Shown here one piece after another: positions 1 to 56,052 of a DNA stretch of 64,000 nucleotides. The notes under the pieces are model-generated. The model was given only the letters and a program-made list of their open reading frames with translations, ran no database searches and was not told the DNA's origin. This stretch comes from Octopus sinensis (taxonomy: Eukaryota): contig NC_043001.1 of NCBI RefSeq assembly GCF_006345805.1, positions 81,778,001 to 81,842,000 of the forward strand, read 5' to 3'. Every line of letters begins with the position of its first letter. Positions within the stretch are counted from its first letter, which is position 1. The position numbers and the translations under genes are program-made.

Positions 1-12
1 TATATATCTATA

Positions 13-360
13 TCAACGGGCATCCGTGCCAGTGGCACATAAAAAGCACCTTTCGAGAGTGATCATTACCAGTGTCGCCTTACTGGCACTTGTGCCAGTG
101 TGCAGGTGGCATGTAAAAAAAAAAAACACCATTTGGGCATGGCCGTTGCCAGTACCACCTGACTGGCCCTTGTGCCGGTGGCACATAAAAGCACCCACTA
201 CACTCTCGGAGTGAATGGTGTTAGGAAGGGCATCCAGCTGTAGAAACTCTGCCAGATCAAGATTCGAGTCTGGTGCAGCCATCTGGTTCGCCAGTCTTCA
301 GTCAAATCCTCCAACCCATGCTAGCATGGAAAGCGGACGTTAAACGATGATGATGATGAT
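13..360 (+). mobile_element. SINE-like family B (internal tandem units, (GAT)n tail)
   Basis: Ends ...CATGCTAGCATGGAAAGCGGACGTTAAACGATGATGATG; about a dozen copies in the window. Confidence 0.75.
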
Positions 361-449
361 ATATATATTATATACCTTTTAAGAGAAATGGTCATACCAA
401 GGTAGGGCCTCCAAGACAGGCAAGAGATAGACAAGAAGCCTTACCTTAC

Positions 450-457
450 CTTAAAGC
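450..457 (-). CDS. Caskin: Candidate 8-nt Caskin microexon GCTTTAAG
   Basis: Context tagtctttttcag|GCTTTAAG|gtaaggtaag, with tandem donors. Joined to the 12-nt exon it gives EASPGFK. No transcript support visible. Confidence 0.3.
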
Positions 458-1580
458 CTGAAAAAGACTAGACTTTGCTAAAGAAACTCAAGGAACAAGA
501 CAGTGATGTTAAACCAGTAATGGATTAAATCTACCACTCAAATAGGTCATGCTGAGATTTGAACTCAGAACACAAAAATCTAGAACAAATACTGCAAGCA
601 ACCCAGTTTGAAATTCTTACAGTTCCATCGCTTCACCACCATGGACTGGTACTTTGTTATTGATCCCCCAAAAAGATAAAAAGCTAAGTTGAATGCCATC
701 TGGCAGCTAAAAACATAGACAGTAACCCAGTTCAGAGCTTGAACCAACTACAGCATCTTTGTTGTAGTTTGTTGTTGTTTAGCCCTATGTCAATACTGAC
801 CATGCCAAACTATGATTAAAGTCTTTACAGTCTTAGCTCTTCTGATTTTGATTTTAGAAAAAATTTAAACCATGTTTATCTGGAAGGAAATGTCTTCATT
901 ATTTTATAAAAATATATCTTGAGAGTGTGATTTGAGGAAGATTTGACTGTTGTTTCTAGTAGGCAAAGGGTCCCTCTTTGTTATCCAATGTCTTCGCCAT
1001 GATAATTCAATGTAATTCAAGGAGGTGATTCCACCCTTTAGCATTCAGGTTATTCTGTCAAATGTAACAAATATTCATTCGCATTGATTTAATTAATTAT
1101 ACATTATCTCATGGCTTTGAGATTTCAATGATCTATTGTTTATGTTTTCAATAACATTGTAAGGTATGTGTGAGAGGCAGGATCTGACCAGTTTTGATAT
1201 GAAACAGAAAATTTGGGGCCAGATATTCATCATCGTCACTTACCATCCGTTGTCCATGCTGGCATGGGTTGGACAGTTTGACCAGAGCTGGCAAGCTGGG
1301 GAGCTGCACCAGAATCCAGTCTGATTTGGCATGGTTTCTATGATTGGATACCCTTCCAAATGCCAACCACTTTACGGAGTGTGCTTGATGCTTTTCATGT
1401 GATGCCACACAGGTGCTTTTACATGGCACCACATGGGATGTAGTATCCTGGTTTAAATACTAAAGGGTTAAGGAAGATTTGACTGCTCTTTCTAGCAAGT
1501 GTAGGATCTCTCGTTTCATAAGAACCATTTTGAAACCAACCAATAAATTAGCTTAAAAAGCCTTATCTTACTTTCTATAC

Positions 1581-1975
1581 TTTTACTCTTTTACTCGTTT
1601 CAGTTATTTGACTGTGGCCATGCTGGAGCACCACCTTTAGTCGAGCAAATCAACCCCAGGACTTATTCTTTGTAAGCCTTAGTACTTATTCTATCGGTCT
1701 CTTTTGCTGAACCGCTAAGTTACAGGGACGTAAACACACCAGCATCGGTTATAAAGTGATGATGAGGAAACAATCACAGACATACAAACATATACATATA
1801 TACATATATACGACAGGCTTCTTTCAGTTTCCGTCTACTAAATCCACTCACGAAGCTTTGGTTGGCCCAAGGCTATCGTAGAAGACATTTACCCCAAGAT
1901 GCCACACAGTGGGACTGAAACTAGGACCATGTGGTTGGTAAGCAAGCTACTTACCACACAGCTACTCCTATGCCT
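1581..1975 (-). mobile_element. SINE family A (tRNA-like head, central (GT)n, GTAAAAGA tail)
   Basis: Full-length reverse copy of the most abundant repeat; well over 15 full or partial copies in the window. Confidence 0.8.
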
Positions 1976-2980
1976 ATAGATATGGTGCATCGGCCGGGAT
2001 CAGAGAACAGTCAATACCACACAGTTTGATTTTCTACAGATGGATGCCCTTCCAGTCACCAAACTTTCCCAGTAAGGTAATATTTCTCATGACTGTACAT
2101 ATTTCCACAGAAGATCGGAAATGAAGGACACTGCTTCTATGACAGGGACGCTCATTTACCACTTACGTACAAGACTCAAACCACCCATGCACACACACAT
2201 GCATACATAATACACACACGCTAAAGTGCAACTCAAACTCCCCCCCACCTGCAGACCCTCCTTTGCGATGTCCCTGGCTCTTCTATACTGCTCTAGTCCT
2301 GAACAGCCACCCCAGGCACCGGCACCCTTCACACCCATCAGGATGAAAAGGGTAATTCACTTGCTACAGATTAAACTACTCAGATATGAATTAATTCTGC
2401 CACCATTGCCAATACACACTCAAACACACACAACAGGTTTCTTTCAATTTCCATTTTCCACATCCACTCACAAGGCTTTGTGGTTGGCCCAGGGTTATAG
2501 AAGAAGACATTTGCCCAAAGTGCCACACAGTAGGACTGAACCTGAAACCAGGTAGCTGTGAAGCAAACTTCTTGACCACATAACCATGAACTGTATCTAA
2601 AAACAGTATCATTTTTATTGAAATGTTTTACTTAAAACTTAATATTCTCAATAAATATTCGAAAATCTAAGACAATTTGATGAAGAAAACAAACCTGCTG
2701 ATAAGTGGACATAACTTGAAAGTATTTGCATTAATTCTAGATTAAAAAAGGGAAACTAAATAGGTGATGCTATGCTAGGCGTCCAGCTGCAGAAAAAAGG
2801 TGGTGGTGGTGGAATACAGGTATGGCTATGTGGTTTAGAAACTTGCTTTGTAACCACATGGTTGTGGGTTCAGTCTCACAGTGCAACATCTTGGGCAGGT
2901 GTCTTCTACTATAGCCCTGGGCCAATCAGTGCCTTGTAAGTGAATTTGGTAGACAGAAACTGTGTGGAAATCCATCATGC

Positions 2981-3011
<31 letters not shown>

Positions 3012-3493
3012 TGTGTGAGTATGTATGTGTGCTTGTGTCAGTGTTTGCCACTGCCTCCACTGCTTGACAACCGGTGTTGGTGTGTTTACATCCCTGTACC
3101 TTAGCAGTTTAGCAAAAGAGACTGACACAGTAAGTGTCAGGTTTTACAAATAAATACTGAGGTCTATTTCTTTGACTAAAAGCCTTCAAAGCAAGCAATT
3201 CAGTATGACCACAGTCCAATAATAACTGAAACAAGTAAAGACAAAAACCCCTAACAATTCAGATCAATGTAAGAATTTGCAGAAATATAACACCCACACC
3301 AACAAGAAAAAAAAATGAATATTGGAAATTGTATTTTTTCTTATTTTTTTTTTTAAGAAATATATTCCATGTACAACATAGCATATATGTATATATATAG
3401 TTAGTTATCATTAGAGAATTAACATTTTCTACATTAACCAAAAAGACTGTAGCCAGTAGTTCTGACTGATCTTTGAACAACCTATTTTCTTAC

Positions 3494-3505
3494 CGGGGCT
3501 TGCTT
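3494..3505 (-). CDS. Caskin: Candidate 12-nt Caskin microexon AAGCAAGCCCCG
   Basis: Long pyrimidine tract then cag; donor G|gtaaga. Read in phase 1 it gives (E)ASP(G), like the EAS linker before the Caskin SH3 domain. No transcript support visible. Confidence 0.35.
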
Positions 3506-3864
3506 CTGATTCCGTGAATGAAGATAATGGTGAGGAGGAGAGAAGAGAAAAGTTGCAAACAACTCTCTGATGAAGAGAGCTACTTTGATAAAGGGAAACA
3601 ACCCCTTCAACAGTTTTTCAAAGTGTAATAGGCTCTTATTCACACATAGGCACAAGGTCACTGTTGTTGTTTAGCATCAACCAAGACTTGATTGAGAAGA
3701 TAAATTCAAGATCAAAGACATTCCATTTATGACTATATTGATTATATCATTTTATTTTTTCCCACATCTAATTGTGTCTAGGACTATATTATTCAGTGTT
3801 AGTGGCAGTCACTGCTTAAAGGAGAGGCCTGGTGAATTGAAATTTGTAGTCTATGAACAAATGC

Positions 3865-4090
3865 TATCTATCCATCTATCTATTGATCTACCTATCAATC
3901 TCTCTACCAATCTATCTCTAATTGTCTTATCTATCTATCTACCTATATCTATCTATCTACCTACCTATATCTATCTATCTATCTATCTACCTACCTATAT
4001 CTATCTATCTACCTATATCTCTCTATCTACCTATCTATCTACCTATCACTCCATCCATCTCACTCTCTTTTAATCTACCTATATCTACCT
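3865..4090. repeat. (TATC/TACC)n microsatellite
   Basis: Directly visible. Confidence 0.9.
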
Positions 4091-5175
4091 TGCTCAGTCA
4101 CTCTCTAATCTAGTTCAGCTCATTACCATCTTGAGTTCAACTCAAGCTTACGATTTTAAAACTTTATATGAGCATATATACGCATGCACGCACGCACACA
4201 TACATACACACACACACACACACAGAAGGTGTAACTAATTGTAAGAGTTATATAAGAGAAATCTGGTAACATTAAACTATGAACATTAATATCAAAAGCT
4301 ATTTTGAAAAGATAAAGGGAAACATTTAACCTAACAACAACAACGCGAACAACACAACTGGAGGACAATACAACAGAGCGAGGGAGGAGGAGAGGGAAAG
4401 AATAAAATGAGAAATTTAGGACGAGCACTCCTCTAACAAAAGCATTTATTAAAATCATGCGTTTGCATTTTAGTTTGAGAAAATATGAAGAAGATAAATG
4501 GAGCTCTTTTTTCTTTCTTTTTCGTTATAAAACATGAACAGATATGGTAATAGGGACAGAAAGTTGGTGACAGTTTAGGGATTAGCCATATTTTAATAAG
4601 TTAACTGGGTTAACCAACCAATGTTAATGAAAAGTTTACGTAGTTGTTAACACATTGAAACATTTTGATTGAAAGTTCACAAGGTGGAGAGGAGAGGTAA
4701 GCATGGCCGTGTAGTTTAGAAGTTATATTTTGCAGGCCACATGGTCCTAAGTTTTGATGGTACTAGGAAGAACTTTTCAGGAGGTGTGTCTGTCTCTTTA
4801 CTGTAGACTTAGATTCACCAATACCTTGTGAGCAGAATTCGGTAAATGGAAACCATGCAGAGGTGTTTCCAATAAAACATCATCATGTATGTGTGTGTGC
4901 ATGAAAAAACATTTGAGCGAGGTCGTTGCCAGTGGTGCTGAACTGGCTCCTAGCGTGGCTGTTGCCAGTACTGCCTGACTGGCCCTCGTGCTGGTGGCAT
5001 GTAAAAGCACCCACTACACTCTTGGAGTGGTTGGCGTTAGGAAGGACATCCAGCTGTAGAAACTCTGCCAGATCAGATTGGAGTCTGGTGCAGCTATCTG
5101 GTTCGCCAGACCTCAGTCAAATCGTTCAACCCATGCTAGCATGGAAAGCGAACGTTAAATGATGATGATATACAC

Positions 5176-5215
<40 letters not shown>

Positions 5216-6354
5216 CTGTAGTGTAACATAAGAATTCATAGAATTGCATAGAAAGCTCTTTCAGTGGCCTTGGCTAACAGACCAGATCACATAGTAATCC
5301 AATATAGAGTTCCATGCAGTTCAATCACTGATGTAATCTTATAAGCTAGCTAGCTTCATCTGCATTGATTTGTGAATATACAATTGTACAGGTATAATAA
5401 TGCATAGTATGCATATTAGTACAGACACGCAAACATAATTTCTTATGCATTGAAATTATTATTACATGATGAAGGCTGCGAAACAGCTGTAATCCTAACA
5501 ATGACAAGTGGCTAAATAAATATATTCACCTGATTTTGTCCTCATTCTTGATCACTCACTCTCTCTTTCTCTGGCTGAGTGACCATGTACACCCTCTACA
5601 GCAAGATACTTGTTTCTGTCTCTCTGATACAAGATCACCTCTTCCAATTCCCCCTCCCCTCTCAAAGGATCTTTGTCTTGCAAGTGACTCGGTGGCCGTG
5701 CCAGTTCTGGTGTCGCGTAAAAGGCATCCAGTCCACACAATGAAGTGGTTGGCATTTGGAAGGACTTCCAGCAGTAAAAACCATGCCAAAACAGACCTCG
5801 CCTGTACTCATGCCACATAAATTTGCTGGGTGGTTGCTGTTTTGGTGTTAGGAAGGGCATCCAGCTGTAAAAGCCATGCTAAAACAGACAGAAGTCTGGT
5901 GCAGTCATCTGCATGGCCAGCTCCTGTCAAACTGTCCGACCCATGTCAGCATGGAAGGTGAATGTTAAATGATGATGATGACCTCTCAGATCTCCTGACT
6001 TTTTAAGGTATACATTCATATATATATATTCAGCCATGTATCCTCTTGACAGCAAGACACCTATGCTTGTCCCTCCATCATACGTTAACCTTTCAAAACC
6101 TGACACAAAGCCACCCACCTTCACCTTTGTTCTCCCCTCAGAGCTTTTTCTTTTTTTCCCCCTGTTCCTTTTCTAGCTTGCAAATTTACATGGGAACTTC
6201 ACAAACACCAGTGGCATCAAGAAACAGCCTAGTACACTCTGTAAAGTGTACTAGTTGACAAGATTCGGTGAGCTGCAAGGCTGCATCAAGCTCCAATGTC
6301 ATCATTTTTATGCAGCACCATTACCAGTACTTTTTTACATGACACCAGTATGAT

Positions 6355-7035
6355 AGGCTTCTTTCAGTTTCTTATTTATTTATTGCCCACAGGGGGCTAA
6401 ACATAGAGGGGACAATCAAGGACAGACAAAGGGATTAAGTCGAATATATCGACACCAATGCATAACTGGCACTTAATTTATTGACCCTGAAAGGATGAAA
6501 GGCAAAGAAACACATCCAAGTCACACACACACATTGTATTTTCCGGAATACAAGGTGACAGTTTTTGTATCTGGTTTGCAAGACTCTTTATGTTAATTTG
6601 TGTGTTGAAACAGTGTATGTTAATAATCTTTTCTACTCTTGGCACAAGGCCCAAAAATTGGGGGGAGGGGGCCAGCTGATTAGATCAACCCCCGTATGCA
6701 ACAGGTACTTAAGTTACCAACCTCGAAAGGATGAAAGGCAAAGTCGACCTTGGCGGAATTTGAACTCAGAATATAAGCATTTCGTCCAGCATGCTAATGT
6801 TTCTTATTTCTTTATTGCCCACAAGGGGCTAAACATAGAGGGGGTAAACAAGGACAGGCAAACGGATTAAGTCGATTATATCGACTCCAGTGCATAACTG
6901 GTACTTATTTAATTGACCCCGAAAGGATGAAAGGCAAAGTCAACCTCAGCGGAATTTGAACTCAGAACGTAATGGCAGACGAAATGCCGCTAAGTATTTC
7001 GCCCGGTGTGCTAACATTTCTGCCAGCTCGCCGCC
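6355..7035 (-). mobile_element. SINE family C cluster
   Basis: Three reverse copies containing GAAAGGATGAAAGGCAAAGTCGACCT. Confidence 0.7.
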
Positions 7036-7643
7036 TTCTTTCAGTTTCTGTCCACACACAGGTCTTTGGTCAGCCTATAGCTATAAAGGAATCACTTGCA
7101 CAAAGTGCCCTGCAGTGGGACTGAACCCAGAACCCTGTGCTCAGGAAGCAAACTTCTTAGTACACAAACATGCCACACCTATAATACATACATACATACA
7201 TACATATATCTTTTATCTTCTACTTGTTCCAGTCATTTGACTGCAGCCATACTTGAAGGCACTTGAAGGATTTTAATCAAACAAACCAACAAGACTTATA
7301 TTTTTGAGTCTGGTACATACTCTATCAGTCTCTTATGCTGAACTGCGAGGTTACAGGGACATAAACACTGGTTGTCCAGTGATGGTGGGAGAGACACAAA
7401 GACAGGCACACATAGCTATTTATATATATGTATATATGTGTGTGTATATATATATATACAAAAAAATCTATATTATTTGTCATTTATGTTTTGGTTTATG
7501 TCTATCACTGTTTGAGTTGCATAATAATGGTTTTATCTCTAATTTATATTTTATATATTTATACTGTGAAATTTGATTTAATACTAAATTGAATTTTTCC
7601 CTGTAAGTTTGGAGTTATACTCCCTAATATTATTATTATTATG

Positions 7644-7687
<44 letters not shown>

Positions 7688-7852
7688 GCTTCTTTCAGTT
7701 TCCATCTACCAAATCCATTCACAAGTCTTTGGTTGGTCCAAAGTTATAGGAGAAGATACTTGCCCAGAATGCCACACAGTGGGACTGAACCTGGAGTCAT
7801 GGGGTCGGAAAGCAAACCTCTTACCACAACCACACCACACCTATAATATGTA

Positions 7853-7889
<37 letters not shown>

Positions 7890-9361
7890 TCTTTTATAAC
7901 AATGAAATCATTGCCTTACTGGGTTTGAGTAGTTATTTTACAAAAGGATAATTTCTCATAAAGTCCAGAATAAAAGAAACACACACCCCGCCTTTGCACA
8001 ACCACGACGATCACAGCTTTTCAGCTACAATCTATTTATAAGACTGTTAGCTAATTGTGTTATGTAACAACAGAATTAAATATGTCAGTATAACCCCCTG
8101 TGTCATCATATTTCCAGGCACAAGCTTGACTATTGTGTCATTTCAGAAAGCCAGGTTGTGTAAACAACCTGAAAAGCAGGATGAAATTTTACCAAAACAA
8201 TATTACACAATAAAAAAAAAGAATAAATAAAAAATAAAGTAAAAAAAAAAAACTTTGCTTTAGACATTACTGCCACTTGACTAAGATATATATCTGCTAC
8301 CTTTAACGTGTATCAATCATTGAATTGCGGCCATGCTGGGGCACCGCCTTGGAGGGGTACTTTTTTTTTGTTTTTTTTCTAAAGCCTGGGGCTTAACTAT
8401 CAGTCTGTTTTGCTGGATTGCTAGGTTGCGGCGATGTAAACACACCAACACCCATTGTCAAGTAGCGATGAAGAACAAACACACACACACACACATAAAC
8501 GACAAGCTTCTCTTAGTTTCCATCCACCAAATCCACTCAGGTCAGTCTGAGGCTATCGTAGAAGACACTTACCCAAGGTGCCACACAGTGCAACTGAACC
8601 CAGAACCATGTGGTTGGAAAGCAAGCTTGTTACCATGCAGCAATGTCTGTGACTATATGTATGTACAAGCAAAACGCTCCTGTCCAATGGACGGTTCTGA
8701 GTTATCAAACATTTAAACCAATTTTCTCAAAACAACTTGTCCGACCGTCCCATTTTGTGGCATTATTTCAAGCCAGCCGGCTTTTTTTGCACAAACTGCA
8801 CATGCATTTTTCTCACATACGCATAGTATCGATTGCAACAGCTGATGTACTTGCGCGTACAAATGCACGTTTACATGGCTTTATCGATCGCATTTTCACC
8901 TGGAATCGATTTTTGTAATTTTTTCAAGACTTATATATACCCTGATACCATCGGTATCTACATATCAAATTTGAGCACAATTGGATGGAGGATGCCCGAG
9001 ATCCTAGAAGACACACACAGACAACGGATTTTATATAATAGATATATCATCATCATTGTCGTCATCATTTAACATTAATTTTCTATGCTAGATTGGGTTA
9101 GATGGTTTGACAGGAGCTGGCTAGGCAGAAGTCAGCACCAGGCCTCACTGTTTTGGCAATGGTTGGATGCCCTTCCTACCACCAAACACCCCACAGAGTA
9201 AACTGAGAGGATTTTTATGCGACAGCAGCACTGCCAAGGTCCATTTTGGTATGGGTTTTACAACTGAATGCCCTTCCAAATACCAGCTACTCTATAGTGT
9301 GGACTGGATGCTTTTTATGTGGCACCACAACTGGTGGGGGTCACCAAATAACTTGCAATAA

Positions 9362-9398
<37 letters not shown>

Positions 9399-10809
9399 CC
9401 TGTGTTTGTCCCCCGCCAGCACTTAACATATATTTCATGGAATTGTCTTTGTGCTGTTGAAGGAGACAAGGTTGGCCACATTGGTTTGGCCACATTGCAG
9501 AATGCTTTTGAGGTTCACAGAGGTCAATGTAGATTTGTATATACATAAGACGGATACACAATGTGAATATAAGTGTATAGGGGAGATGTTTGTATTAGGG
9601 CAGTGATATAACATGGACAGGTGTGTATATAAATGTATAACAGATGTGTATAGAGGGAAGATGCGCATATAGAACAGATGTGTGATAAGACTGATATATA
9701 ATTTTGGTTTCAAATTTTGGCACAATGCCAGTAACTTCAGGGGAGGGGTCAAGTCAATTACATTGACCCCAGTGCTCAACTGGTCCTTATTTTATTGACT
9801 CTGGAAGGATGAAAGGCAAAGTCAACACTGGTGGAACTTAAACTCAGAACGCAAAGGTGGACGAGATGCTGCTCAGTATTTTGCCTGTTGCATTAACAAT
9901 TCTGCCAGCTCACCACCTTATGGATAGACATATATTAACAGACATGTATACAGAGATGTGTGCCAGGGAGATATATATATATATTGTTGCTATTATGCAA
10001 GTGTTGTTAATCCAAAATGTTGCTTTTTCAGAAAACGAAAAAGTAGTTTCACCATTCCATTTTTTACATTAGCAACAGTTTCAGCTTAACAACAATCATT
10101 CTTAGGTGCATAAACTCATAACTCCATGCATGTGAGAAATATCTTTGCAAAACTGTCTTATGTGGGCCTTACTACACTTTTGGAAAATGCTAAACCATTG
10201 TACGACACTTTGACAATTTTCATATCTCGGTATCTGAAGCAGCTGGAGATATAATAATTTGACCAAAAGAACTGGCAATTGCAAGCAAAATTAAATATTG
10301 CAAAAACGCATTTAGCTAAATTTGGACATACGATTGTTTGACATAACAGCAACATATATATATATATATATATGTTTATTGAAATGGATAAATGAATTAT
10401 CTTGTTAAGGATTTTTCAAAATTTAACCGAAACCTGGGTAGCAAAAATCACAACAGAAAAAACACGGTTGAAGTTACGACCTTGGGGTGTCGCAACCGTG
10501 CCTTAACGCGGATAATTGAAGTTTAATATATTTAGTGATGGGAAGAAATGGAGCTGAACGAAGATTCTACAGAATTCCTTTTATTATTTTCTACACGTTT
10601 TGGATTTTTAAATTCCTGGATTTCCTGAAAAGAATGCTGCAAAATGGTCTCCTTATTCAATCCGAATTTGGAAATTTGCGGCCTTTGAAACATGTGTAGA
10701 AAATAATAAAAGGAATTCTGTAGAATCTTCGTTCAGCTCCATTTCTTCCCTTCACTAAATATATATATATATTAACAGATGGGAATTCCAACCACTTCTT
10801 GTGGTTTGC

Positions 10810-11390
10810 TACCTCAACAGCTCCTTTATAGGATCCAGTGGCTAAGGACATCATCAGGAGGAACCATGTCCGGTTTTGTCCCCTACTCCTCTACAGTTTT
10901 TGACGTGGTGGTGTCTTCAGCTCTGGTGTTGAATGCATTTTTTTGCTTTTTTCTTTGGTTTCCTCAATGCAGCATCAACAAATGCCAACAGGCGAATGAC
11001 CACCCTGCCAAATTTCCCTTCAAATACTTGCTGGTAGGCATTGGCAGCCAATGCCAGCTAACTGTCACATGACACAATCTAAATTTCAACTGACCAATGA
11101 AGGGAAAGGGCATGTAGTTCTGGTCTGCGCCCTCTCAAGACCTACCTTCCAACAGAGCCGTGTTAGTTTCAGTTACAATAGCCAGAGTAACCACTAGGTG
11201 TCTAGTGGTTCAAGCCTTCAAACTATCGGGGAGAAGGGTGTGCAATGAATGAAATGGTTCCCTTGGTCCACCTGTCAAGCAGCAATGCAAATTAAGTGCC
11301 AGCCAGCCTTACCTAGCAATGCTATTTCCCAGTCGGCATGTTATGGCTTTCAAGCCATTTTGAGTCTTCTCATTTCAGCCATGTATAGAA
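10810..11390 (-). mobile_element. Old degraded RTE-like LINE C-terminal fragment
   Basis: Frameshifted minus-strand remnants (LLYMAE..., EGRS.., ALAAN..QQVFEG, K-rich end) resembling the RTE/BovB ORF end. Confidence 0.45.
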
Positions 11391-12085
11391 GCTGGGGGGG
11401 AAGGAATAACTGTGTGGGATAGATATGTAATATTGGTTTCATATTTTGGCACAAGGCCAGCAATTTCAAGTGAGGGGATAAGTGAATTACACTGACACCA
11501 GTGCTCAACTGGTACTTATTTTATTAACCCCAAAAGGATGAAAGGTGAAATCGACCTCACTGGAATTTGAACTCAGAACAAGAGTGAAATGCTACTGAGC
11601 ATTTTGCCCGGGATGCCAATGATTCTGTCAGCGCACCACCTTAGATAGATATATATTAACAGTTATGTAGCCAGGGAAGATGTCTGCATGGGATACATGT
11701 ATAATATTAACAGATGTATATACAGAAAAGATGTATGGGATAGATATACAATATTAACAGATGTGTATATGGAGAAGATGACTTTATTAGGAGAATCATA
11801 ATGTGGACAGTTGGGTTCAGGGGCGATACCTATATTAAAATAGACATGTAATATTGATAGATATGTGTAGGAGAAGATTTCTAAACTAGGACAGGCATGG
11901 TACTAACAGATATTCACAGGATAAATAACTGTATTAGCACAGATATATGATCTCAACAGAGAGGTACAGGAGAGAAATTGTTATCAATATAGATAAGTAA
12001 TACAGACAGGGATGTACATGAGAAACATCTGTATTAGAATAGATGTGTGATATATACAGATATATTTGCACGAGTCAAGTGGTAT

Positions 12086-12600
12086 AGTTAAGTTAAGTTA
12101 ATTTTTTGGCTCAAAAAGCAAAAAGCAAGGCCATGTAGGGGGACATGGAGTTATGTACAGGGAGGGTGTTCATGCAAAGAGTTCAGGCCATTTCTGATCA
12201 AGAGCAACTTTGAACCGAGCGGTCGTCGGCATCTTCACTATCTCGTCTGGCAGCTTATTCCACGGATCCGCAACCCGGACGGAGAAAGCCCCTCTCCTTC
12301 GATTGAGATGAAATCGTCGCAGATAGAGCTTTTCGGAGTGACCCCCGCAGCCGACGCTCTGGAGCAGGAGTGAAGAACAGCTCTTTCAAGAGGTTACACT
12401 TTCCGCTTATGATGTTGTGAGCGAGAATGAGATCACCACAGCGTCATCGTTTTTCTAGAGAATAAAGGTCGAGCGTCTTCAGCCTTTCTTCATAAAACAA
12501 ATGCTTGAGACCAAGAACCACACGGGTAGCCAGCTTCTGGACTCTTTTGAGATGATGTATGTCTTTGAGGAGTGAATGTCGGTGTAGATGATATTAACAA
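12086..12600 (-). mobile_element. CR1-clade LINE 3' fragment
   Basis: Minus frame reads ...[42 protein letters not shown]...FSVRVADPWNKLP..., the CR1 RT C-terminus, followed by a 3' UTR and (AACTT)n tail. Confidence 0.85.
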
Positions 12601-13261
12601 ATGAGTACAAGGGAGATGACTGCTGGTATAACCATGTGGTGCAAAGAAGATGGCTGCATCAGTCTCTTTTACTTGTCTCAGTCATTTGACTGCAGCCATG
12701 CTGGAGCACCGCCTTTAGTCGAGCAAATCAACCCCATGACTAATTATTTGTAAGCCTAGTACTTATTCTATCGGTCTCTTTTTCCGAACCGCTAAGTTGC
12801 AGGGACGTAAACACACCAGCATCTGTTGTCAAGTGATATTGGGGGGACAAACACAGTCACACAAACAAACACACACATATATATACATATATACGACGGG
12901 CTTCTTTCAGTTTCTATCTACCGAATCCACTCACAAGGCTTTGGTTGGCCCAAGGCTATTGTAGAAGACATGTGCCCAAGGTGCCACGCAGTGGGACTGA
13001 ACCTTTTGAGTCACATGAGATCATAGTCGTAGCCAATGCTAATGTTGTGCCAATGGCATGTAAAAAGCACCCACTACATTCTTGGAGTGGTTGGTGTTAG
13101 GAAGGGCATCTAGCCGCAGAAACCATGTCAAATCAGATTGGAACATGGTGCAGCCCCAACCTCTGCTCCCAGTTTACTAGTTTTCAGTCAAACAATCCAA
13201 CCCATGCCAGCATGGAAAACAGATGTTGAATGACAATGATGATGATAATGATAAGTTAACC

Positions 13262-13553
13262 CAGTGGTTCCCAAAGTTTTCCAGGTTACCGCCCCCTCGG
13301 TTCTAAGGCCATATTCCCAGTGCCCCCCCCCCACACACACACACACCACAACCACCACCACCACCACCACTCACATCACAGACCATTTTCTGCAGCAAAT
13401 TCAAATCGACAGTATTTCACAAATAAAACTTCTTTTTTTTTTACATCCATTGCCCAGTTTTCGTCACCTCATTATTGTCTCATTTTTCTTCAACACCCAC
13501 CTGGATCTTCCCCCCCCCAGGGGGGTTGTTACCACCCAGTTTGATAACCACTG
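13262..13553. mobile_element. hAT-type MITE with perfect 8-bp TSD
   Basis: TIRs CAGTGGTTCCCAAA / TTTGATAACCACTG; TSD AGTTAACC at 13254-13261 and 13554-13561. Confidence 0.8.
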
Positions 13554-13698
13554 AGTTAACCTACTGCTTTGTGCTGTAAATTTTGGTTCGAAAAGTTTAA
13601 CTTGCATGGTGGAAAAACATGGTACACACACACACACACACACAACATACACAACAACACACACACACACACACACACCAAGATACAAACTAACTTAC

Positions 13699-13829
13699 TT
13701 AACGATATCTGTGTGTCCATTCCTGGCAGCTAAATGGAGGCAAGTGGTATGTTCATTATCAACCATGTCGTCTGCCTGGTCCTTCAAAAGTTCTTGACAT
13801 TGACTGCTTTTTATAAGGAGTTCCACCAC
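13699..13829 (-). CDS. Caskin: Caskin-like ankyrin-repeat exon (131 nt, phase 0 to 2)
   Basis: Acceptor tttctttccag, donor AA|gtaagt. Encodes VVELLIKSSQCQELLKDQADDMVDNEHTTCLHLAARNGHTDIV(K), colinear with Caskin VVQLLL...LHLAAKNGHIDII. Confidence 0.93.
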
Positions 13830-14062: not shown

Positions 14063-14300
14063 CATCATCATCATCATCATCGTTTAACGTCCGTTTTCCA
14101 TGCTAGCATGGGTTGGACGGTTCGACCGGGGTCTGGGAAGCCAGAAGGCTGCACCAGGCTCCAGTCTGATCTGGCAGTGTTTCTACAGCTGGATGCCCTT
14201 CCTAATGCCAACCACACCATGGATGTGTAGTGGGTGCTTTTTACGTGCCAAGCGAGGCTGGCAATGGCCACAATCGGATTGGTGCTTTTTACGTGCCAGA
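14063..14300 (-). mobile_element. SINE-like family B
   Basis: (CAT)n followed by CGTTTAACGTCCGTTTTCCATGCTAGCATGGG. Confidence 0.7.
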
Positions 14301-20220: not shown

Positions 20221-20316
20221 CCGAAATCGACCGAATTCACAGGCCGAGTCTATTGGTGTACGATGTGCGTTATTTACAATGCGTGGGTCAGCATGTTGCA
20301 CCAATAACATGTTCAC
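20221..20316 (-). CDS. Caskin: Caskin-like ankyrin-repeat exon (96 nt, phase 0 to 0)
   Basis: Acceptor ctttctcttgacag, donor CGG|gtaggt. Encodes VNMLLVQHADPRIVNNAHRTPIDSACEFGRFR, in frame with the previous exon; ACEFGR is a Caskin hallmark. Not in the ORF track. Confidence 0.93.
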
Positions 20317-22396: not shown

Positions 22397-22600
22397 CAAG
22401 GAGATTCGGCATGACACAGAATATGACATGGCTAACTTCTGGTCAGTTTGAACATGGAACAGAGTGAATATTTGGGCCAGATAACTGGCACCCCATCAAT
22501 TGCAATGACAAGTGTTTCACTTCATCTGATTAACGGAACAGCCTGCTTGTAAGATTAATGTGCTAGTGACTGAGCACTCCACAGATATGTGTACCCTTAA

Positions 22601-29016: not shown

Positions 29017-29162
29017 CACATCATAATGACCATGTTGAGAGGCAAGATGGAGAGCCGTACCACCATCATCGGCTTTCTCGTCAACAGGAGAGCCATGTTC
29101 AAGTAAGAGTCGCACTGGTTCAACTTTACCCTGCCAAGCAGCATAGTGTAATGCTATCATGC
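29017..29162 (-). CDS. Caskin: Caskin-like ankyrin-repeat exon (146 nt, phase 1 to 0)
   Basis: Acceptor tttgtctgttgcag, donor GTG|gtaagc. Encodes (G)[48 protein letters not shown], matching the Caskin-type LHYAAWQG...LHLAAQHGHYDV ankyrin repeats. Confidence 0.93.
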
Positions 29163-29840
29163 CTGCAACAGACAAAAAAAAAAAAAGGAAAAAATAAGAT
29201 TTCAATCCTGACAAATATGGTAACTTTATGGACATCATTTTCATTCTTTGTTTTACATGTTTTATAAAGATATGACACAGATTTTACAGATACATATATA
29301 TTTGATTTAAAAGCTTTTGTATTAATGGAAAACCTATATATTTGGCTGATGAGCACTCAGCATCTTAAATCTGCTGTAATACTTACAACTTTTAATAAAA
29401 TGATGTAGTGTGAAACAATTGTACCAAAACACCGGAGTCATTCTTGTTGCTTATTTTGATTATAATCACCCTGCAAATTTTTATGGATAACACCATACAA
29501 AATTCTGGTGCATCTAAATTAAGTACCATATTCATTTGAATCTAAATTGTTGCTGAACTTATATATATATATGTAAATAAGGATAAGATCGTTAATTTAA
29601 TTATCAATTTTATGAAATGGTCAGCATGGAATAAAAATCTTCAAAGGTAATAATTATTATTAAAATTATAATTTAGGGTATCTAAGAGATACCTCCACAT
29701 TGGAAATAGCAGCCAAATGTTGACTCTAAAACCACATTAAATGAACATTTAATATGGTTTTAGAGTCAAGATTTGGCTGCTATTTCCAGCGTGGAGGTAT
29801 CTCTTGGATACCCTAAATTATAATTTATATATATATATAT

Positions 29841-41466: not shown

Positions 41467-41538
41467 TCCTCAGTAGTATAGTGGTAAGTATCCCCGCCTG
41501 TCACGTGGGAGACCGGGGTACGATTCCCCACCAGGGAG
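41467..41538 (+). pseudogene. tRNA-Asp(GTC)-derived pseudogene or SINE head
   Basis: 72 nt colinear with eukaryotic tRNA-Asp(GUC), anticodon loop CTGTCAC. CpG-type substitutions break the acceptor and T stems, and the B box is altered (GGTACGA). Confidence 0.8.
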
Positions 41539-47585: not shown

Positions 47586-48459
47586 AACATAGATATATAG
47601 ACAGATATACATACATACCTACATACATGTAAAAATATATTTAGGACAGTTACACTAAGAAACCTTTTATTCGTACCCTACCTGTGGAGCATGAAAGGTG
47701 GAGTGCAAGGTGGAGGAATGGTGGTGCATTATGGGATTGATAACCAGCAATGATTAAATTCAGAAATCTGCTCAACACACCTTTATTTACTTAGTATGAG
47801 AACTGATGACTATGACAACAGCAATGATGATGATGATGATTGCGGTGGTAATGATGATGATGATGTTAATGTTTGCATTGATGATGATGAAGATGATATT
47901 GAAATGGAAAGATAAACATTTGCAGGGCGTGAGGACGGGAGGGAGGGTGTTGGTGGGGAGTGTGTTGGTGGGGAGTGTTGGCAGGAGAGCTGCTGGGATA
48001 GGGCGGGGGGTTGGTCGTTATGTAGGTGCAACATCAGAGGACCCAAAGGTTTATTCCTATTCCTCAGTGGTGTGAGTGTGTGCATGGGGAGCAGGGAGTG
48101 TGTGTGTGTGTGTGTGTATTGGTGGGATTCCAACAGACACTCCACCCGCACTTTACCCCTCCCCCTCCACTCTCACTCACCTCAGAAAAAAACTTGGCGT
48201 AGGTGGGGGGAAATCCTGGAGTGAGAAAGGAAAGCTTGGTGCATTCTGTGAAGTGTGTGTGTGTATGTGTGTGGCGGGGGTGGCATTATAGGAAGAGCTT
48301 GGATTAAAAACATTTGTCTAAAAAGAACCCAGATAATGATAATATTAATAATAATAATAATAATAATAATGATAATAGCAACAATAATAATTTTTTATCT
48401 TTTACTTCTTTATTAGAACGCAATCATGCAGAGGCACCACCTTGAGTAATATTGATAAT

Positions 48460-51009: not shown

Positions 51010-51468
51010 AACTGGCGTCTGTGCTAGTGGAGCGCTAAGAGCACCATCCGAGCATCATTGTTGCCAGAGCAGCAAACTGGCTTCCATGCCGGAGGCATGT
51101 AAAAAGCACCATTCGAACGTGATTGTTACCAGCGTCACCTTACTGGCACTTGTGCTGGTGGCACAAGAAAAAACATTCGAGCGAAGTCGCTGCCAGTGTC
51201 ACTGGACTGGCTCCTGTGCAGGTGGCATGTAAAAAACACCATTTGAGTGTGGCTGTTCTAGTACCGCCTGACTGGCCCTCGTGCCAGTGGCACGTAAAAG
51301 CACCCACTACACTCTCAGAGTGGTTGGTGTTAGGAAGGGCATCCAGCTGTAGAAACTCTGCCAGATCAAGATTGGAGTCTGGTGCAGCCATCTGGTTTGC
51401 CAGTCCTCAGTCAAATCGTCCAACCCATGCTAGCATGGAAAGCGGACGTTAAACGATGATGATGATGC
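51010..51468 (+). mobile_element. SINE-like family B, longest copy
   Basis: About four internal ~65-bp units plus the conserved 3' region and (GAT)n tail. Confidence 0.75.
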
Positions 51469-51708
51469 ATAGATACATAGGTGTGTGCATGTGCATGCAC
51501 ACATATATGCATATATAAATATATAGATCAAACCCATGATGCTACCATGGAAAAATAGATGTAAATTATATTTATACACACCCACGCAGACATGTGTGTG
51601 CCTTTAAACACCAAAACATATGCATGAGTGATTTGTACATTCATATAAGAGATGTGATTCCAGCCATAATTATCCATCCTGTCTTTTACACAGACACAAT
51701 ATATTTAA

Positions 51709-55593: not shown

Positions 55594-56052
55594 CCCTTTC
55601 GTTATCAATCCGGCTGAAACCGGCTCTGGCTCTTTAGTATAAATGTCTTGTTTTCATAAGTTTTGAATTCAAATCTTCCACCAAATCTTAGTTAAAATGA
55701 TGTTCCTAACACTAGCTTAATGATAACGAAGTTAATTTACTAAATTCTTTGTTATCATCATCATCATTTAGCGTCCGCTTTCCATGCTGGCATGGGTTGG
55801 ACGGTGCAACTGGGGTTTGGGAAGCCAGAAGGCTGCACCAGGCCCAGTCTGATCTGGCAATGTTTCTATGGCTGGATGCCCTTCCTAACGCCAAACACTC
55901 CATGAGTGTAGTGGGTGCTTTTTACGTGCCACCGACACGGAGACCAGGCGAGGCTGGCAACAGCCACGATCGGATGGTGCTTTTTACATGCCACATTTAA
56001 AATAATTGAAAGTAACACAGAGCATCTCAAAATAAATACAGTAATGAAAGGG
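55594..56052. mobile_element. piggyBac-type MITE family E with nested SINE
   Basis: TTAA|CCCTTTC...GAAAGGG|TTAA; inserted in a family F MITE and contains a family B SINE (about 55760-55997). Confidence 0.65.

What the first reader, a model, noticed from the sequence alone, without database searches (positions are those of the whole stretch)
450..3505. Candidate pair of Caskin microexons (12 nt + 8 nt) that together read EASPGFK
Seen: two tiny minus-strand segments with strong splice signals, cag|AAGCAAGCCCCG|gtaaga (3494-3505, long pyrimidine tract, NAGNAG acceptor) and tttttcag|GCTTTAAG|gtaaggtaag (450-457). After a phase-1 G they encode E-A-S-P-G-F-K and end in phase 0. From recalled knowledge, vertebrate Caskins have EASAALQ/EASGILK at the ankyrin-SH3 linker, starting at a phase-1 boundary but inside one ordinary exon. 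Inference, reading 1: this lineage has split the linker into two microexons. Reading 2: the next ankyrin exons lie left of base 1, the 12-mer is an in-frame insert (K-SKPR) and the 8-mer is a poison exon (AAG CTT TAA). They could also be chance splice-like sites.
Basis: partly seen in the sequence, partly recalled or inferred. Interest (0 to 1): 0.7.

Follow-up and report, generated by a model that had tools for sequence, protein, structure and literature searches.

The report
Splice-like decoys in octopus Caskin intron
The two tiny segments are really in the sequence, but they sit inside a long intron of the octopus Caskin gene, upstream of exons they would have to follow, so they are most likely chance splice-like sites and not the linker microexons proposed.

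Summary
Both strings are at the stated coordinates on the minus strand: cag|AAGCAAGCCCCG|gtaaga (3505-3494) and cag|GCTTTAAG|gtaaggtaagg (457-450). The host gene is octopus Caskin. The window holds three ankyrin exons, 29162-29017, 20316-20221 and 13829-13699, 100% identical to residues 96-220 of Octopus sinensis caskin-1.

All seven long annotated octopod Caskin proteins found (O. sinensis X1-X3, O. vulgaris, two O. bimaculoides, Argonauta hians) read ...[18 protein letters not shown]...[19 protein letters not shown]...SH3. The real linker is EASFAVK and follows two further ankyrin repeats. Nothing after residue 220 maps to the window.

Reading 1 (EASPGFK) is refuted on three counts:
- Exon order is wrong: the candidates lie before the exons for ankyrin repeats 5 and 6.
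- Phase is wrong: the upstream exon ends with AA (two bases of a codon), not a single G.
- The EAS match is uninformative: 6 of 6 control-strand decoys also give tripeptide matches.

In the true frame the 12-mer would insert SKPR into helix 2 of ankyrin repeat 4, and the 8-mer gives AAG CTT TAA, a stop. No annotated isoform carries either. The splice signals are near chance level for the 12-mer and moderately unusual for the 8-mer (about 5% of shuffles).

RNA-seq and cross-species DNA could not be examined. That leaves roughly 8% for a real 12-nt alternative microexon and 6% for a poison or recursive site.

The parts
3494..3505 (-). 12-nt splice-like segment AAGCAAGCCCCG inside the Caskin intron. 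In the true frame it reads AA|A AGC AAG CCC CG|N, an in-frame SKPR insert after K220.
   Evidence: Sequence. PWM scores: acceptor 1.7, donor 9.6. AG-free zone 55 nt and 23/25 pyrimidines. Chance counts. Absent from all octopod Caskin proteins.
450..457 (-). 8-nt splice-like segment GCTTTAAG followed by a tandem donor GTAAGGTAAGG. In the true frame it reads AA|G CTT TAA, a stop. The AG at 451-450 directly abuts GTAAG (449-445), which resembles a recursive splice site.
   Evidence: Sequence. PWM scores: acceptor 5.8, donor 11.4. 4.7% of shuffles of the intron part reach this level. It is the only AG|GTAAG site with a pyrimidine tract in the window.
13699..13829 (-). Caskin ankyrin repeat 4 exon ([43 protein letters not shown] + AA). 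It starts in phase 0 and ends with 2 bases of the K220 codon.
   Evidence: 100% identical to residues 177-220 of P0475.
20221..20316 (-). Caskin ankyrin repeat 3 exon, 96 nt, phase 0 at both ends (VNMLLVQHADPRIVNNAHRTPIDSACEFGRFR).
   Evidence: 100% identical to residues 145-176 of P0475.
29017..29162 (-). Caskin exon covering ankyrin repeat 2 and part of repeat 3 ((G)[12 protein letters not shown]…QHGHYDV). It starts with 2 bases that complete a codon and ends in phase 0.
   Evidence: 100% identical to residues 96-144 of P0475.
1..13698 (-). 5' part of the intron between the ankyrin repeat 4 exon and the repeat 5 exon (the latter lies outside the window). 44% of it has another copy elsewhere in the window.
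   Evidence: No match to Caskin residues 221-420, to an ankyrin consensus, to a gastropod Caskin tail or to 13 diagnostic 5-mers. Repeat content.

Best explanation
The two segments are intronic pseudo-exons, that is, chance matches to splice-site consensus. They lie in the first 13.7 kb of the long intron between the ankyrin repeat 4 exon (13829-13699) and the repeat 5 exon of an octopus Caskin gene.

Shown: the normal mRNA splices 13699 directly to an exon left of base 1 that begins (G/A)-CTN-CTN… (LLIQNG…). The real ankyrin-SH3 linker, EASFAVK, is encoded further downstream, outside the window.

Inferred: the tiny segments are ignored by the spliceosome. If they are used at all, it is as noise, and use of the 8-mer would create a premature stop and lead to decay of the transcript.
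For: 1. Spliced translation of the three window exons is 100% identical over 124 aa to UniRef A0A0L8GHC2 (O. bimaculoides) and to residues 96-220 of O. sinensis caskin-1 X1.
2. Seven annotated octopod Caskin proteins from four species, including three O. sinensis isoforms, all read [20 protein letters not shown]… with no insert. All carry [19 protein letters not shown] before the SH3 domain. Pfam places an Ank repeat at 205-233 and SH3 at 300-356.
3. Residues 221-420 have no match anywhere in the window. Ankyrin repeats 5 and 6 and the linker therefore lie outside it, downstream of both candidates.
4. The upstream exon ends in AA, not in a phase-1 G.
5. Pairs at the 12-mer's score level are expected about 1.2 times per 13.7 kb, and 6 occur on the non-coding plus strand.
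6. A tripeptide match to the 200 aa after DIVK is found for 6 of 6 plus-strand decoys, so 'EAS' carries no weight.
7. Neither acceptor has a UGC motif close upstream. The nearest is about 50 nt upstream for the 12-mer, and there is none in 83 nt for the 8-mer. Its relevance to SRRM/eMIC-dependent microexons is from my own knowledge.
Against: The 12-mer has a long pyrimidine tract and a 55-nt AG-free zone like the real exons here, a good donor, a length divisible by 3 and no stop. It is unique in the window at its own thresholds.

The 8-mer's joint splice score is reached in only 4.7% of shuffles.

Annotation pipelines commonly miss exons of 12 nt or less, so absence from predicted proteins is weak evidence. 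No RNA-seq and no orthologous intron DNA could be examined.
Confidence: 0.82

Rival explanations
1. Reading 2a: the 12-nt segment is a genuine in-frame alternative (probably neural) microexon. When included it turns …DIVK-LLIQ… into …DIVK-SKPR-LLIQ…, altering ankyrin repeat 4 of Caskin.
For: It is 12 nt and open in the true frame: AA|A AGC AAG CCC CG|N. It has a long pyrimidine tract, a 55-nt AG-free zone and a 9.6-bit donor. It lies in single-copy DNA. Caskin is a neuronal scaffold, a gene class rich in microexons (my own knowledge).
Against: No isoform in four octopod species has the insert. The insertion point, between residues 220 and 221, falls in the middle of a Pfam Ank repeat (205-233), which is helix 2; adding four residues including a proline there should break the repeat (inference from the known ankyrin fold). 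The bases just before the AG are purine-rich (ggaatcag), giving a PWM acceptor score of 1.7. There is no nearby UGC. Decoys of this grade are expected by chance.
Confidence: 0.08
2. Reading 2b: the 8-nt site has a regulatory role. Either it is a poison microexon (AAG CTT TAA) that sends Caskin transcripts to nonsense-mediated decay, or its AG|GTAAG|GTAAGG core at 450/449 is a recursive splice site that helps remove a very long intron in steps.
For: The donor is strong (11.4 bits) and duplicated, and the acceptor scores 5.8. Only 4.7% of shuffles match this. It is the only AG|GTAAG site with a pyrimidine tract in 128 kb of both strands. Joining the upstream exon end …TAA to GTAAGG would regenerate a usable 5' splice site (sequence). 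The intron is longer than 13.7 kb, and the orthologous Argonauta gene spans 335 kb.
Against: The pyrimidine tract is short, with AGs 8-20 nt upstream (tctag, caaag), so the AG-free zone is only 8 nt. A genome of this size would hold thousands of such sites by chance. There is no transcript or conservation evidence. Recursive splicing has not, to my knowledge, been shown in cephalopods.
Confidence: 0.06
3. Reading 1 (the headline): the ankyrin-SH3 linker of Caskin has been split into a 12-nt and an 8-nt microexon that together encode EASPGFK.
For: In a phase-1 frame after a G the two segments do read E-A-S-P-G-F-K. The true octopod linker is EASFAVK, which shares E, A, S and the final K.
Against: The true linker is present, intact and continuous with …KALLK and …ARAIKEH…SH3 in every model. 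It follows ankyrin repeats 5 and 6, whose exons are not in the window, so the candidates are upstream of exons they would have to follow. The upstream exon ends in phase 2 with AA. Tripeptide matches are routine for decoys.
Confidence: 0.01

Closest known systems
Caskin (CASK-interacting protein; vertebrate CASKIN1/2, Drosophila Ckn), the host gene
   Same: The window exons are 100% identical to annotated octopod caskin-1/caskin-2-like proteins. Those proteins have ankyrin repeats, an SH3 domain, two SAM domains and a weak Caskin-tail match. The linker motif EAS… before SH3 is shared with vertebrates (octopus EASFAVK; vertebrate EASAALQ from memory).
   Different: Nothing unusual. The window holds only ankyrin repeats 2 to 4. 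The 2015 O. bimaculoides model (151 aa) is a truncated fragment that reads into introns at both ends.
Intronic pseudo-exons or decoy splice sites
   Same: Consensus-like AG…GT pairs deep in a long, repeat-rich intron, at about the frequency chance predicts, and absent from all annotated mRNAs.
   Different: The 8-mer's joint score and the 12-mer's long pyrimidine tract are at the better end of the decoy distribution.
Neural microexons (3-27 nt, SRRM3/4 eMIC-dependent)
   Same: Size. A neuronal scaffold host gene. A strong 5' splice site. For the 12-mer, frame preservation and a long pyrimidine tract.
   Different: No transcript support. No UGC motif between the tract and the AG. The insert would fall inside helix 2 of an ankyrin repeat, not in a loop or linker. 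The 8-mer breaks the frame.
Recursive splice sites (ratchet points) and poison exons
   Same: The AG|GTAAG juxtaposition at 450/449 in a very long intron, and an in-frame TAA if the 8-mer is included.
   Different: Weak, short pyrimidine tract with nearby upstream AGs. No evidence of use or conservation.

Membership tests
Caskin gene (host) | N-terminal ankyrin repeats with Caskin-specific sequence | tested here: met
   124 aa spliced from the window are 100% identical to O. sinensis caskin-1 residues 96-220 and 94% identical to Argonauta caskin-2-like. Pfam Ank families match.
Caskin gene (host) | SH3 domain, two SAM domains and a C-terminal Caskin tail in the same protein | tested here: met
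   Pfam on P0475: SH3_2 at 300-356, SAM_1/SAM_2 with two stretches, and Caskin-tail at 23.7 bits, below its cutoff of 35. These parts lie outside the window.
Coding microexon of the ankyrin-SH3 linker (reading 1) | Lies downstream of the last ankyrin exon and upstream of the SH3 exon | tested here: not met
   The sequences for ankyrin repeats 5 and 6, the linker and SH3 (residues 221-420) are absent from the window. The candidates lie directly after the repeat 4 exon.
Coding microexon of the ankyrin-SH3 linker (reading 1) | Frame continuity with the upstream exon (a phase-1 G) | tested here: not met
   The upstream exon ends …GTT AA| in phase 2. K220 is completed by the next exon.
Coding microexon of the ankyrin-SH3 linker (reading 1) | Encoded peptide present in the protein | tested here: not met
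   All octopod models have EASFAVK, not EASPGFK.
Alternative in-frame microexon (reading 2a, 12-mer) | 3-27 nt, AG/GT flanks, preserves the frame without a stop | tested here: met
   AA|A AGC AAG CCC CG|N gives K-SKP-R.
Alternative in-frame microexon (reading 2a, 12-mer) | Included in some transcripts | tested here: inconclusive
   None of seven annotated proteins or isoforms from four species has it. Annotations often miss exons of 12 nt or less, and no reads were available.
Alternative in-frame microexon (reading 2a, 12-mer) | Sequence and splice sites conserved across species | not testable with these tools
   The orthologous gene range is too long for DNA retrieval (335 kb in Argonauta), and P0121 is not on record.
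Alternative in-frame microexon (reading 2a, 12-mer) | UGC enhancer close upstream of the 3' splice site (SRRM/eMIC type) | tested here: not met
   The nearest TGC ends about 50 nt upstream. There is none in the 83 nt before the 8-mer. That this motif defines the class is from my own knowledge.
Poison exon (reading 2b, 8-mer) | Inclusion creates a premature stop codon | tested here: met
   AA|G CTT TAA G.
Poison exon (reading 2b, 8-mer) | Regulated inclusion and conservation | not testable with these tools
   No RNA-seq and no orthologous intron DNA.
Recursive splice site | Pyrimidine tract followed by AG|GTAAG in a long intron | tested here: inconclusive
   ctttttcaggctttaag|GTAAGG at 450/449 has an acceptor score of 4.1 and is the only such site in the window. 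The tract is short and interrupted.

The most novel reading that the evidence does not exclude
The 12-nt segment could be a lineage-specific, probably neural, alternative microexon. It would insert SKPR into helix 2 of ankyrin repeat 4 of octopus Caskin, remodelling or locally unfolding the ankyrin platform. Separately, the nearby 8-nt AG|GTAAG|GTAAGG site could be a poison or recursive-splicing element in a giant cephalopod intron.
Probability: 0.1. Interest if true: 0.35.

Novelty: not a real feature. Interest (0 to 1): 0.1.

Why it matters
As it stands, it matters little. The result tidies the gene model: three Caskin ankyrin exons, with the next exon outside the window. It also removes a false microexon call.

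It is a useful caution. In repeat-rich cephalopod introns tens of kilobases long, AG…GTAAG pairs with decent pyrimidine tracts arise by chance, and three-residue matches to a remembered motif carry no weight.

If the 12-mer were real, it would be an unusual microexon that interrupts an ankyrin helix in a synaptic scaffold. That would be of modest interest to people working on splicing evolution in cephalopod nervous systems.

Tried and rejected
- Padded-query search. A search with the 92-aa two-exon peptide padded with X to reach full-length proteins was swamped by proteins with many ankyrin repeats. So was the exhaustive HMMER search with the 76-aa peptide of exons 3 and 4. Both rank by score summed over repeats.
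- What worked instead. An unpadded 124-aa search found the O. bimaculoides fragment. A padded 124-aa search found the Argonauta/Octopus Caskin cluster.
- Orthologous DNA for a conservation test. P0121 is not on record and the Argonauta gene range is too long. I did not scan the metagenome, bacterial or viral collections, which cannot hold cephalopod introns.
- Literature. No paper links Caskin to its own microexons. One preprint includes O. bimaculoides in a splicing survey but does not mention Caskin.
- A hidden ankyrin repeat 5 exon in 1-13698. Rejected. An ankyrin-like peptide LILQAGCSVN at 22558-22529 (minus strand) lies in the wrong intron and is a chance hit.
- The candidates as part of a transposable element. 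They are single-copy within the window.

Full report
**Observation.** On the minus strand the window reads …ttttctcttctctcctcctcaccattatcttcattcacggaatcag|AAGCAAGCCCCG|gtaagaaaat (exon-like bases 3505-3494). It also reads …gagtttctttagcaaagtctagtctttttcag|GCTTTAAG|gtaaggtaaggctt (457-450). The reference exon is cag|GTGGTGGAACTC…GATATCGTTAA|gtaagt at 13829-13699, 131 nt.

**Host gene and exon map.** An ankyrin-consensus tblastn found three minus-strand coding pieces. Inspection of their borders gives:
- 29162-29017: starts with 2 bases completing a codon and ends in phase 0.
- 20316-20221: 96 nt, phase 0 at both ends.
- 13829-13699: starts in phase 0 and ends with AA, two bases of a codon.

Their spliced translation (124 aa) is 100% identical to UniRef A0A0L8GHC2 of Octopus bimaculoides. 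That 151-aa 2015 model reads into intron at both ends. A padded search then found a 90%-identity cluster. It holds Argonauta hians caskin-2-like X1 (1346 aa), Octopus sinensis caskin-1 X1, X2 and X3 (1353, 1349 and 1340 aa), O. vulgaris caskin-2-like (1316 aa) and two partial O. bimaculoides caskin-2 models. Pfam on O. sinensis X1 gives ankyrin repeats, SH3 at 300-356, two SAM domains and a weak Caskin-tail match. The window is from an Octopus species. The coding sequence does not discriminate among O. sinensis, O. vulgaris and O. bimaculoides. Intron-derived residues of the 2015 O. bimaculoides model differ slightly from the window.

**What follows exon 13829-13699 in real proteins.** All seven long octopod models read …[106 protein letters not shown]…(SH3). 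The O. sinensis isoforms differ in only two places. One is a 13-residue N-terminal segment (NGNKMRTLERKSLE region). The other is a 4-residue SHSS repeat after the SH3 domain. Neither is at the DIVK|LLIQ junction.

A tblastn of residues 1-420 of O. sinensis X1 against the window maps only residues 96-220, at 100% identity. Thirteen diagnostic 5-mers from residues 221-310, plus eight from the N-terminus, have no hit in any frame. A gastropod Caskin tail finds nothing new either. The exons for ankyrin repeats 5 and 6, the linker and SH3 therefore lie left of base 1. Positions 1-13698 are the first part of one long intron. The Argonauta orthologue spans 335 kb, so introns of this size are normal for the gene.

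**Consequences for reading 1.** The proposed EASPGFK fails on three counts.
- It needs a preceding exon that ends in a single G. The only upstream exon ends in AA.
- It would place linker-coding exons upstream of the exons for ankyrin repeats 5 and 6.
- The true linker, EASFAVK, is present, intact and contiguous with its neighbours in every model.

The partial resemblance (E, A, S and the final K) is a coincidence. Among splice-like decoys of the same grade, 6 of 6 on the non-coding plus strand also give a tripeptide match to the 200 residues after DIVK. In the true frame the 12-mer itself matches 'SKP' from the SH3 region. The third, absence of reads, could not be tested.

**Consequences for reading 2.** In the true frame the 12-mer reads AA|A AGC AAG CCC CG|N, which is K-S-K-P-R: a clean four-residue insertion between residues 220 and 221. 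That point lies in the middle of the Pfam Ank match 205-233, in the second helix of the repeat (…[12 protein letters not shown]…). Inserting four residues including a proline there should disrupt the repeat. This is an inference from the well-known ankyrin fold, not something tested here. The 8-mer reads AA|G CTT TAA, a premature stop. Including both segments also reaches TAA. No annotated isoform contains either segment.

**Chance expectation.** I used a generic PWM built from approximate textbook frequencies, not trained on cephalopods. The three real exons score 5.2-15.1 (acceptor) and 6.5-9.2 (donor). The 12-mer scores 1.7 and 9.6, and the 8-mer 5.8 and 11.4.
- Pairs 3-27 nt apart that are at least as good as the 12-mer number 9 on the minus strand and 6 on the plus strand. 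Dinucleotide shuffles of the 13.7-kb intron part give 1.19 on average, and 62% contain at least one.
- At the 8-mer's level the shuffles give 0.05, and 4.7% contain at least one.
- The short PWM undervalues a distant pyrimidine tract, so I also measured the AG-free zone and the best 25-nt pyrimidine count. The 12-mer has 55 nt and 23/25, comparable with two real exons (43 nt and 24/25; 64 nt and 22/25). It is unique in the window at its own thresholds. At looser ones there is 1 on the minus and 2 on the plus strand.

The 12-mer is therefore a respectable decoy and the 8-mer a moderately unusual one. Neither is beyond what a 2-3 Gb genome (size from my own knowledge) produces in bulk. Neither has a UGC motif near its acceptor. 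The relevance of that motif to SRRM-dependent microexons is from my own knowledge. Both lie in DNA that is single-copy within the window, next to abundant interspersed repeats.

**A side possibility.** The 8-mer ends in AG directly followed by GTAAGGTAAGG. Positions 450/449 therefore form AG|GTAAG, the core of a recursive splice site. It is the only such site with any pyrimidine tract in the window. Its tract is short, and AGs occur 8-20 nt upstream. I rate this a low-probability curiosity.

**What could not be done.** No RNA-seq is reachable with these tools. Orthologous intron DNA could not be fetched. The literature search found nothing on Caskin microexons.

**Verdict.**
- The headline interpretation is refuted.
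- The most likely explanation is chance splice-like sites in a long Caskin intron, with confidence about 0.82.
- Residual possibilities are a real 12-nt alternative microexon (about 0.08) and an 8-nt poison or recursive element (about 0.06).
- Interest is low.

Noticed in passing
window 20221-20316 (-): A 96-nt Caskin exon for ankyrin repeat 3 (VNMLLVQHADPRIVNNAHRTPIDSACEFGRFR) lies between the two longer ankyrin exons. It escaped simple LHxAA-type motif scans because the repeat is atypical (TPIDSACEFGR).
   Followed up: yes
window 41467-41538 (+): ARAGORN calls a tRNA-Asp (GTC) inside the upstream Caskin intron, on the opposite strand. It could be a genuine nested tRNA gene or a tRNA-derived repeat.
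   Followed up: no
window 13630-13690 (-): A long (GT)n/(TG)n microsatellite starts about 10 nt after the donor of the ankyrin repeat 4 exon.
   Followed up: no
window 15-375, 1223-1430, 5066-5194, 14067-14176, 51359-51478, 55754-55859 and others: A SINE-like interspersed repeat family has at least 12 copies at 74-94% identity. Overall, 50% of the window has at least one other copy within the window.
   Followed up: partly
window 29163-29283 (-) versus protein P0121: The 2015 O. bimaculoides model A0A0L8GHC2 starts in the intron ([27 protein letters not shown]) and stops by reading through the donor at 13698 (GTT AAG TAA). Its intron-derived residues differ from the window (I for V, and a different poly-T run). 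The window is therefore not that assembly or haplotype, or it is a sister species.
   Followed up: partly
outside the window (O. sinensis caskin-1 isoforms P0474, P0475, P0478): The annotated isoforms differ by a 13-residue N-terminal segment (…VKN[NGNKMRTLERKSLE]LINSK…, a roughly 39-nt alternative exon) and by a 4-residue SHSS unit after SH3. These are the small alternative events that the annotations record for octopod Caskin.
   Followed up: partly
window 48181-48192 (-): Another 12-nt splice-like pair sits in the upstream Caskin intron: ttccccccacctacgccaag|TTTTTTTCTGAG|gtgagt, acceptor 4.8 and donor 12.1.
   Followed up: no
window 22529-22558 (-): The peptide LILQAGCSVN resembles the start of an ankyrin inter-repeat segment. 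It lies in the intron between the first two window exons, so it is in the wrong order, and I judged it a chance hit.
   Followed up: partly
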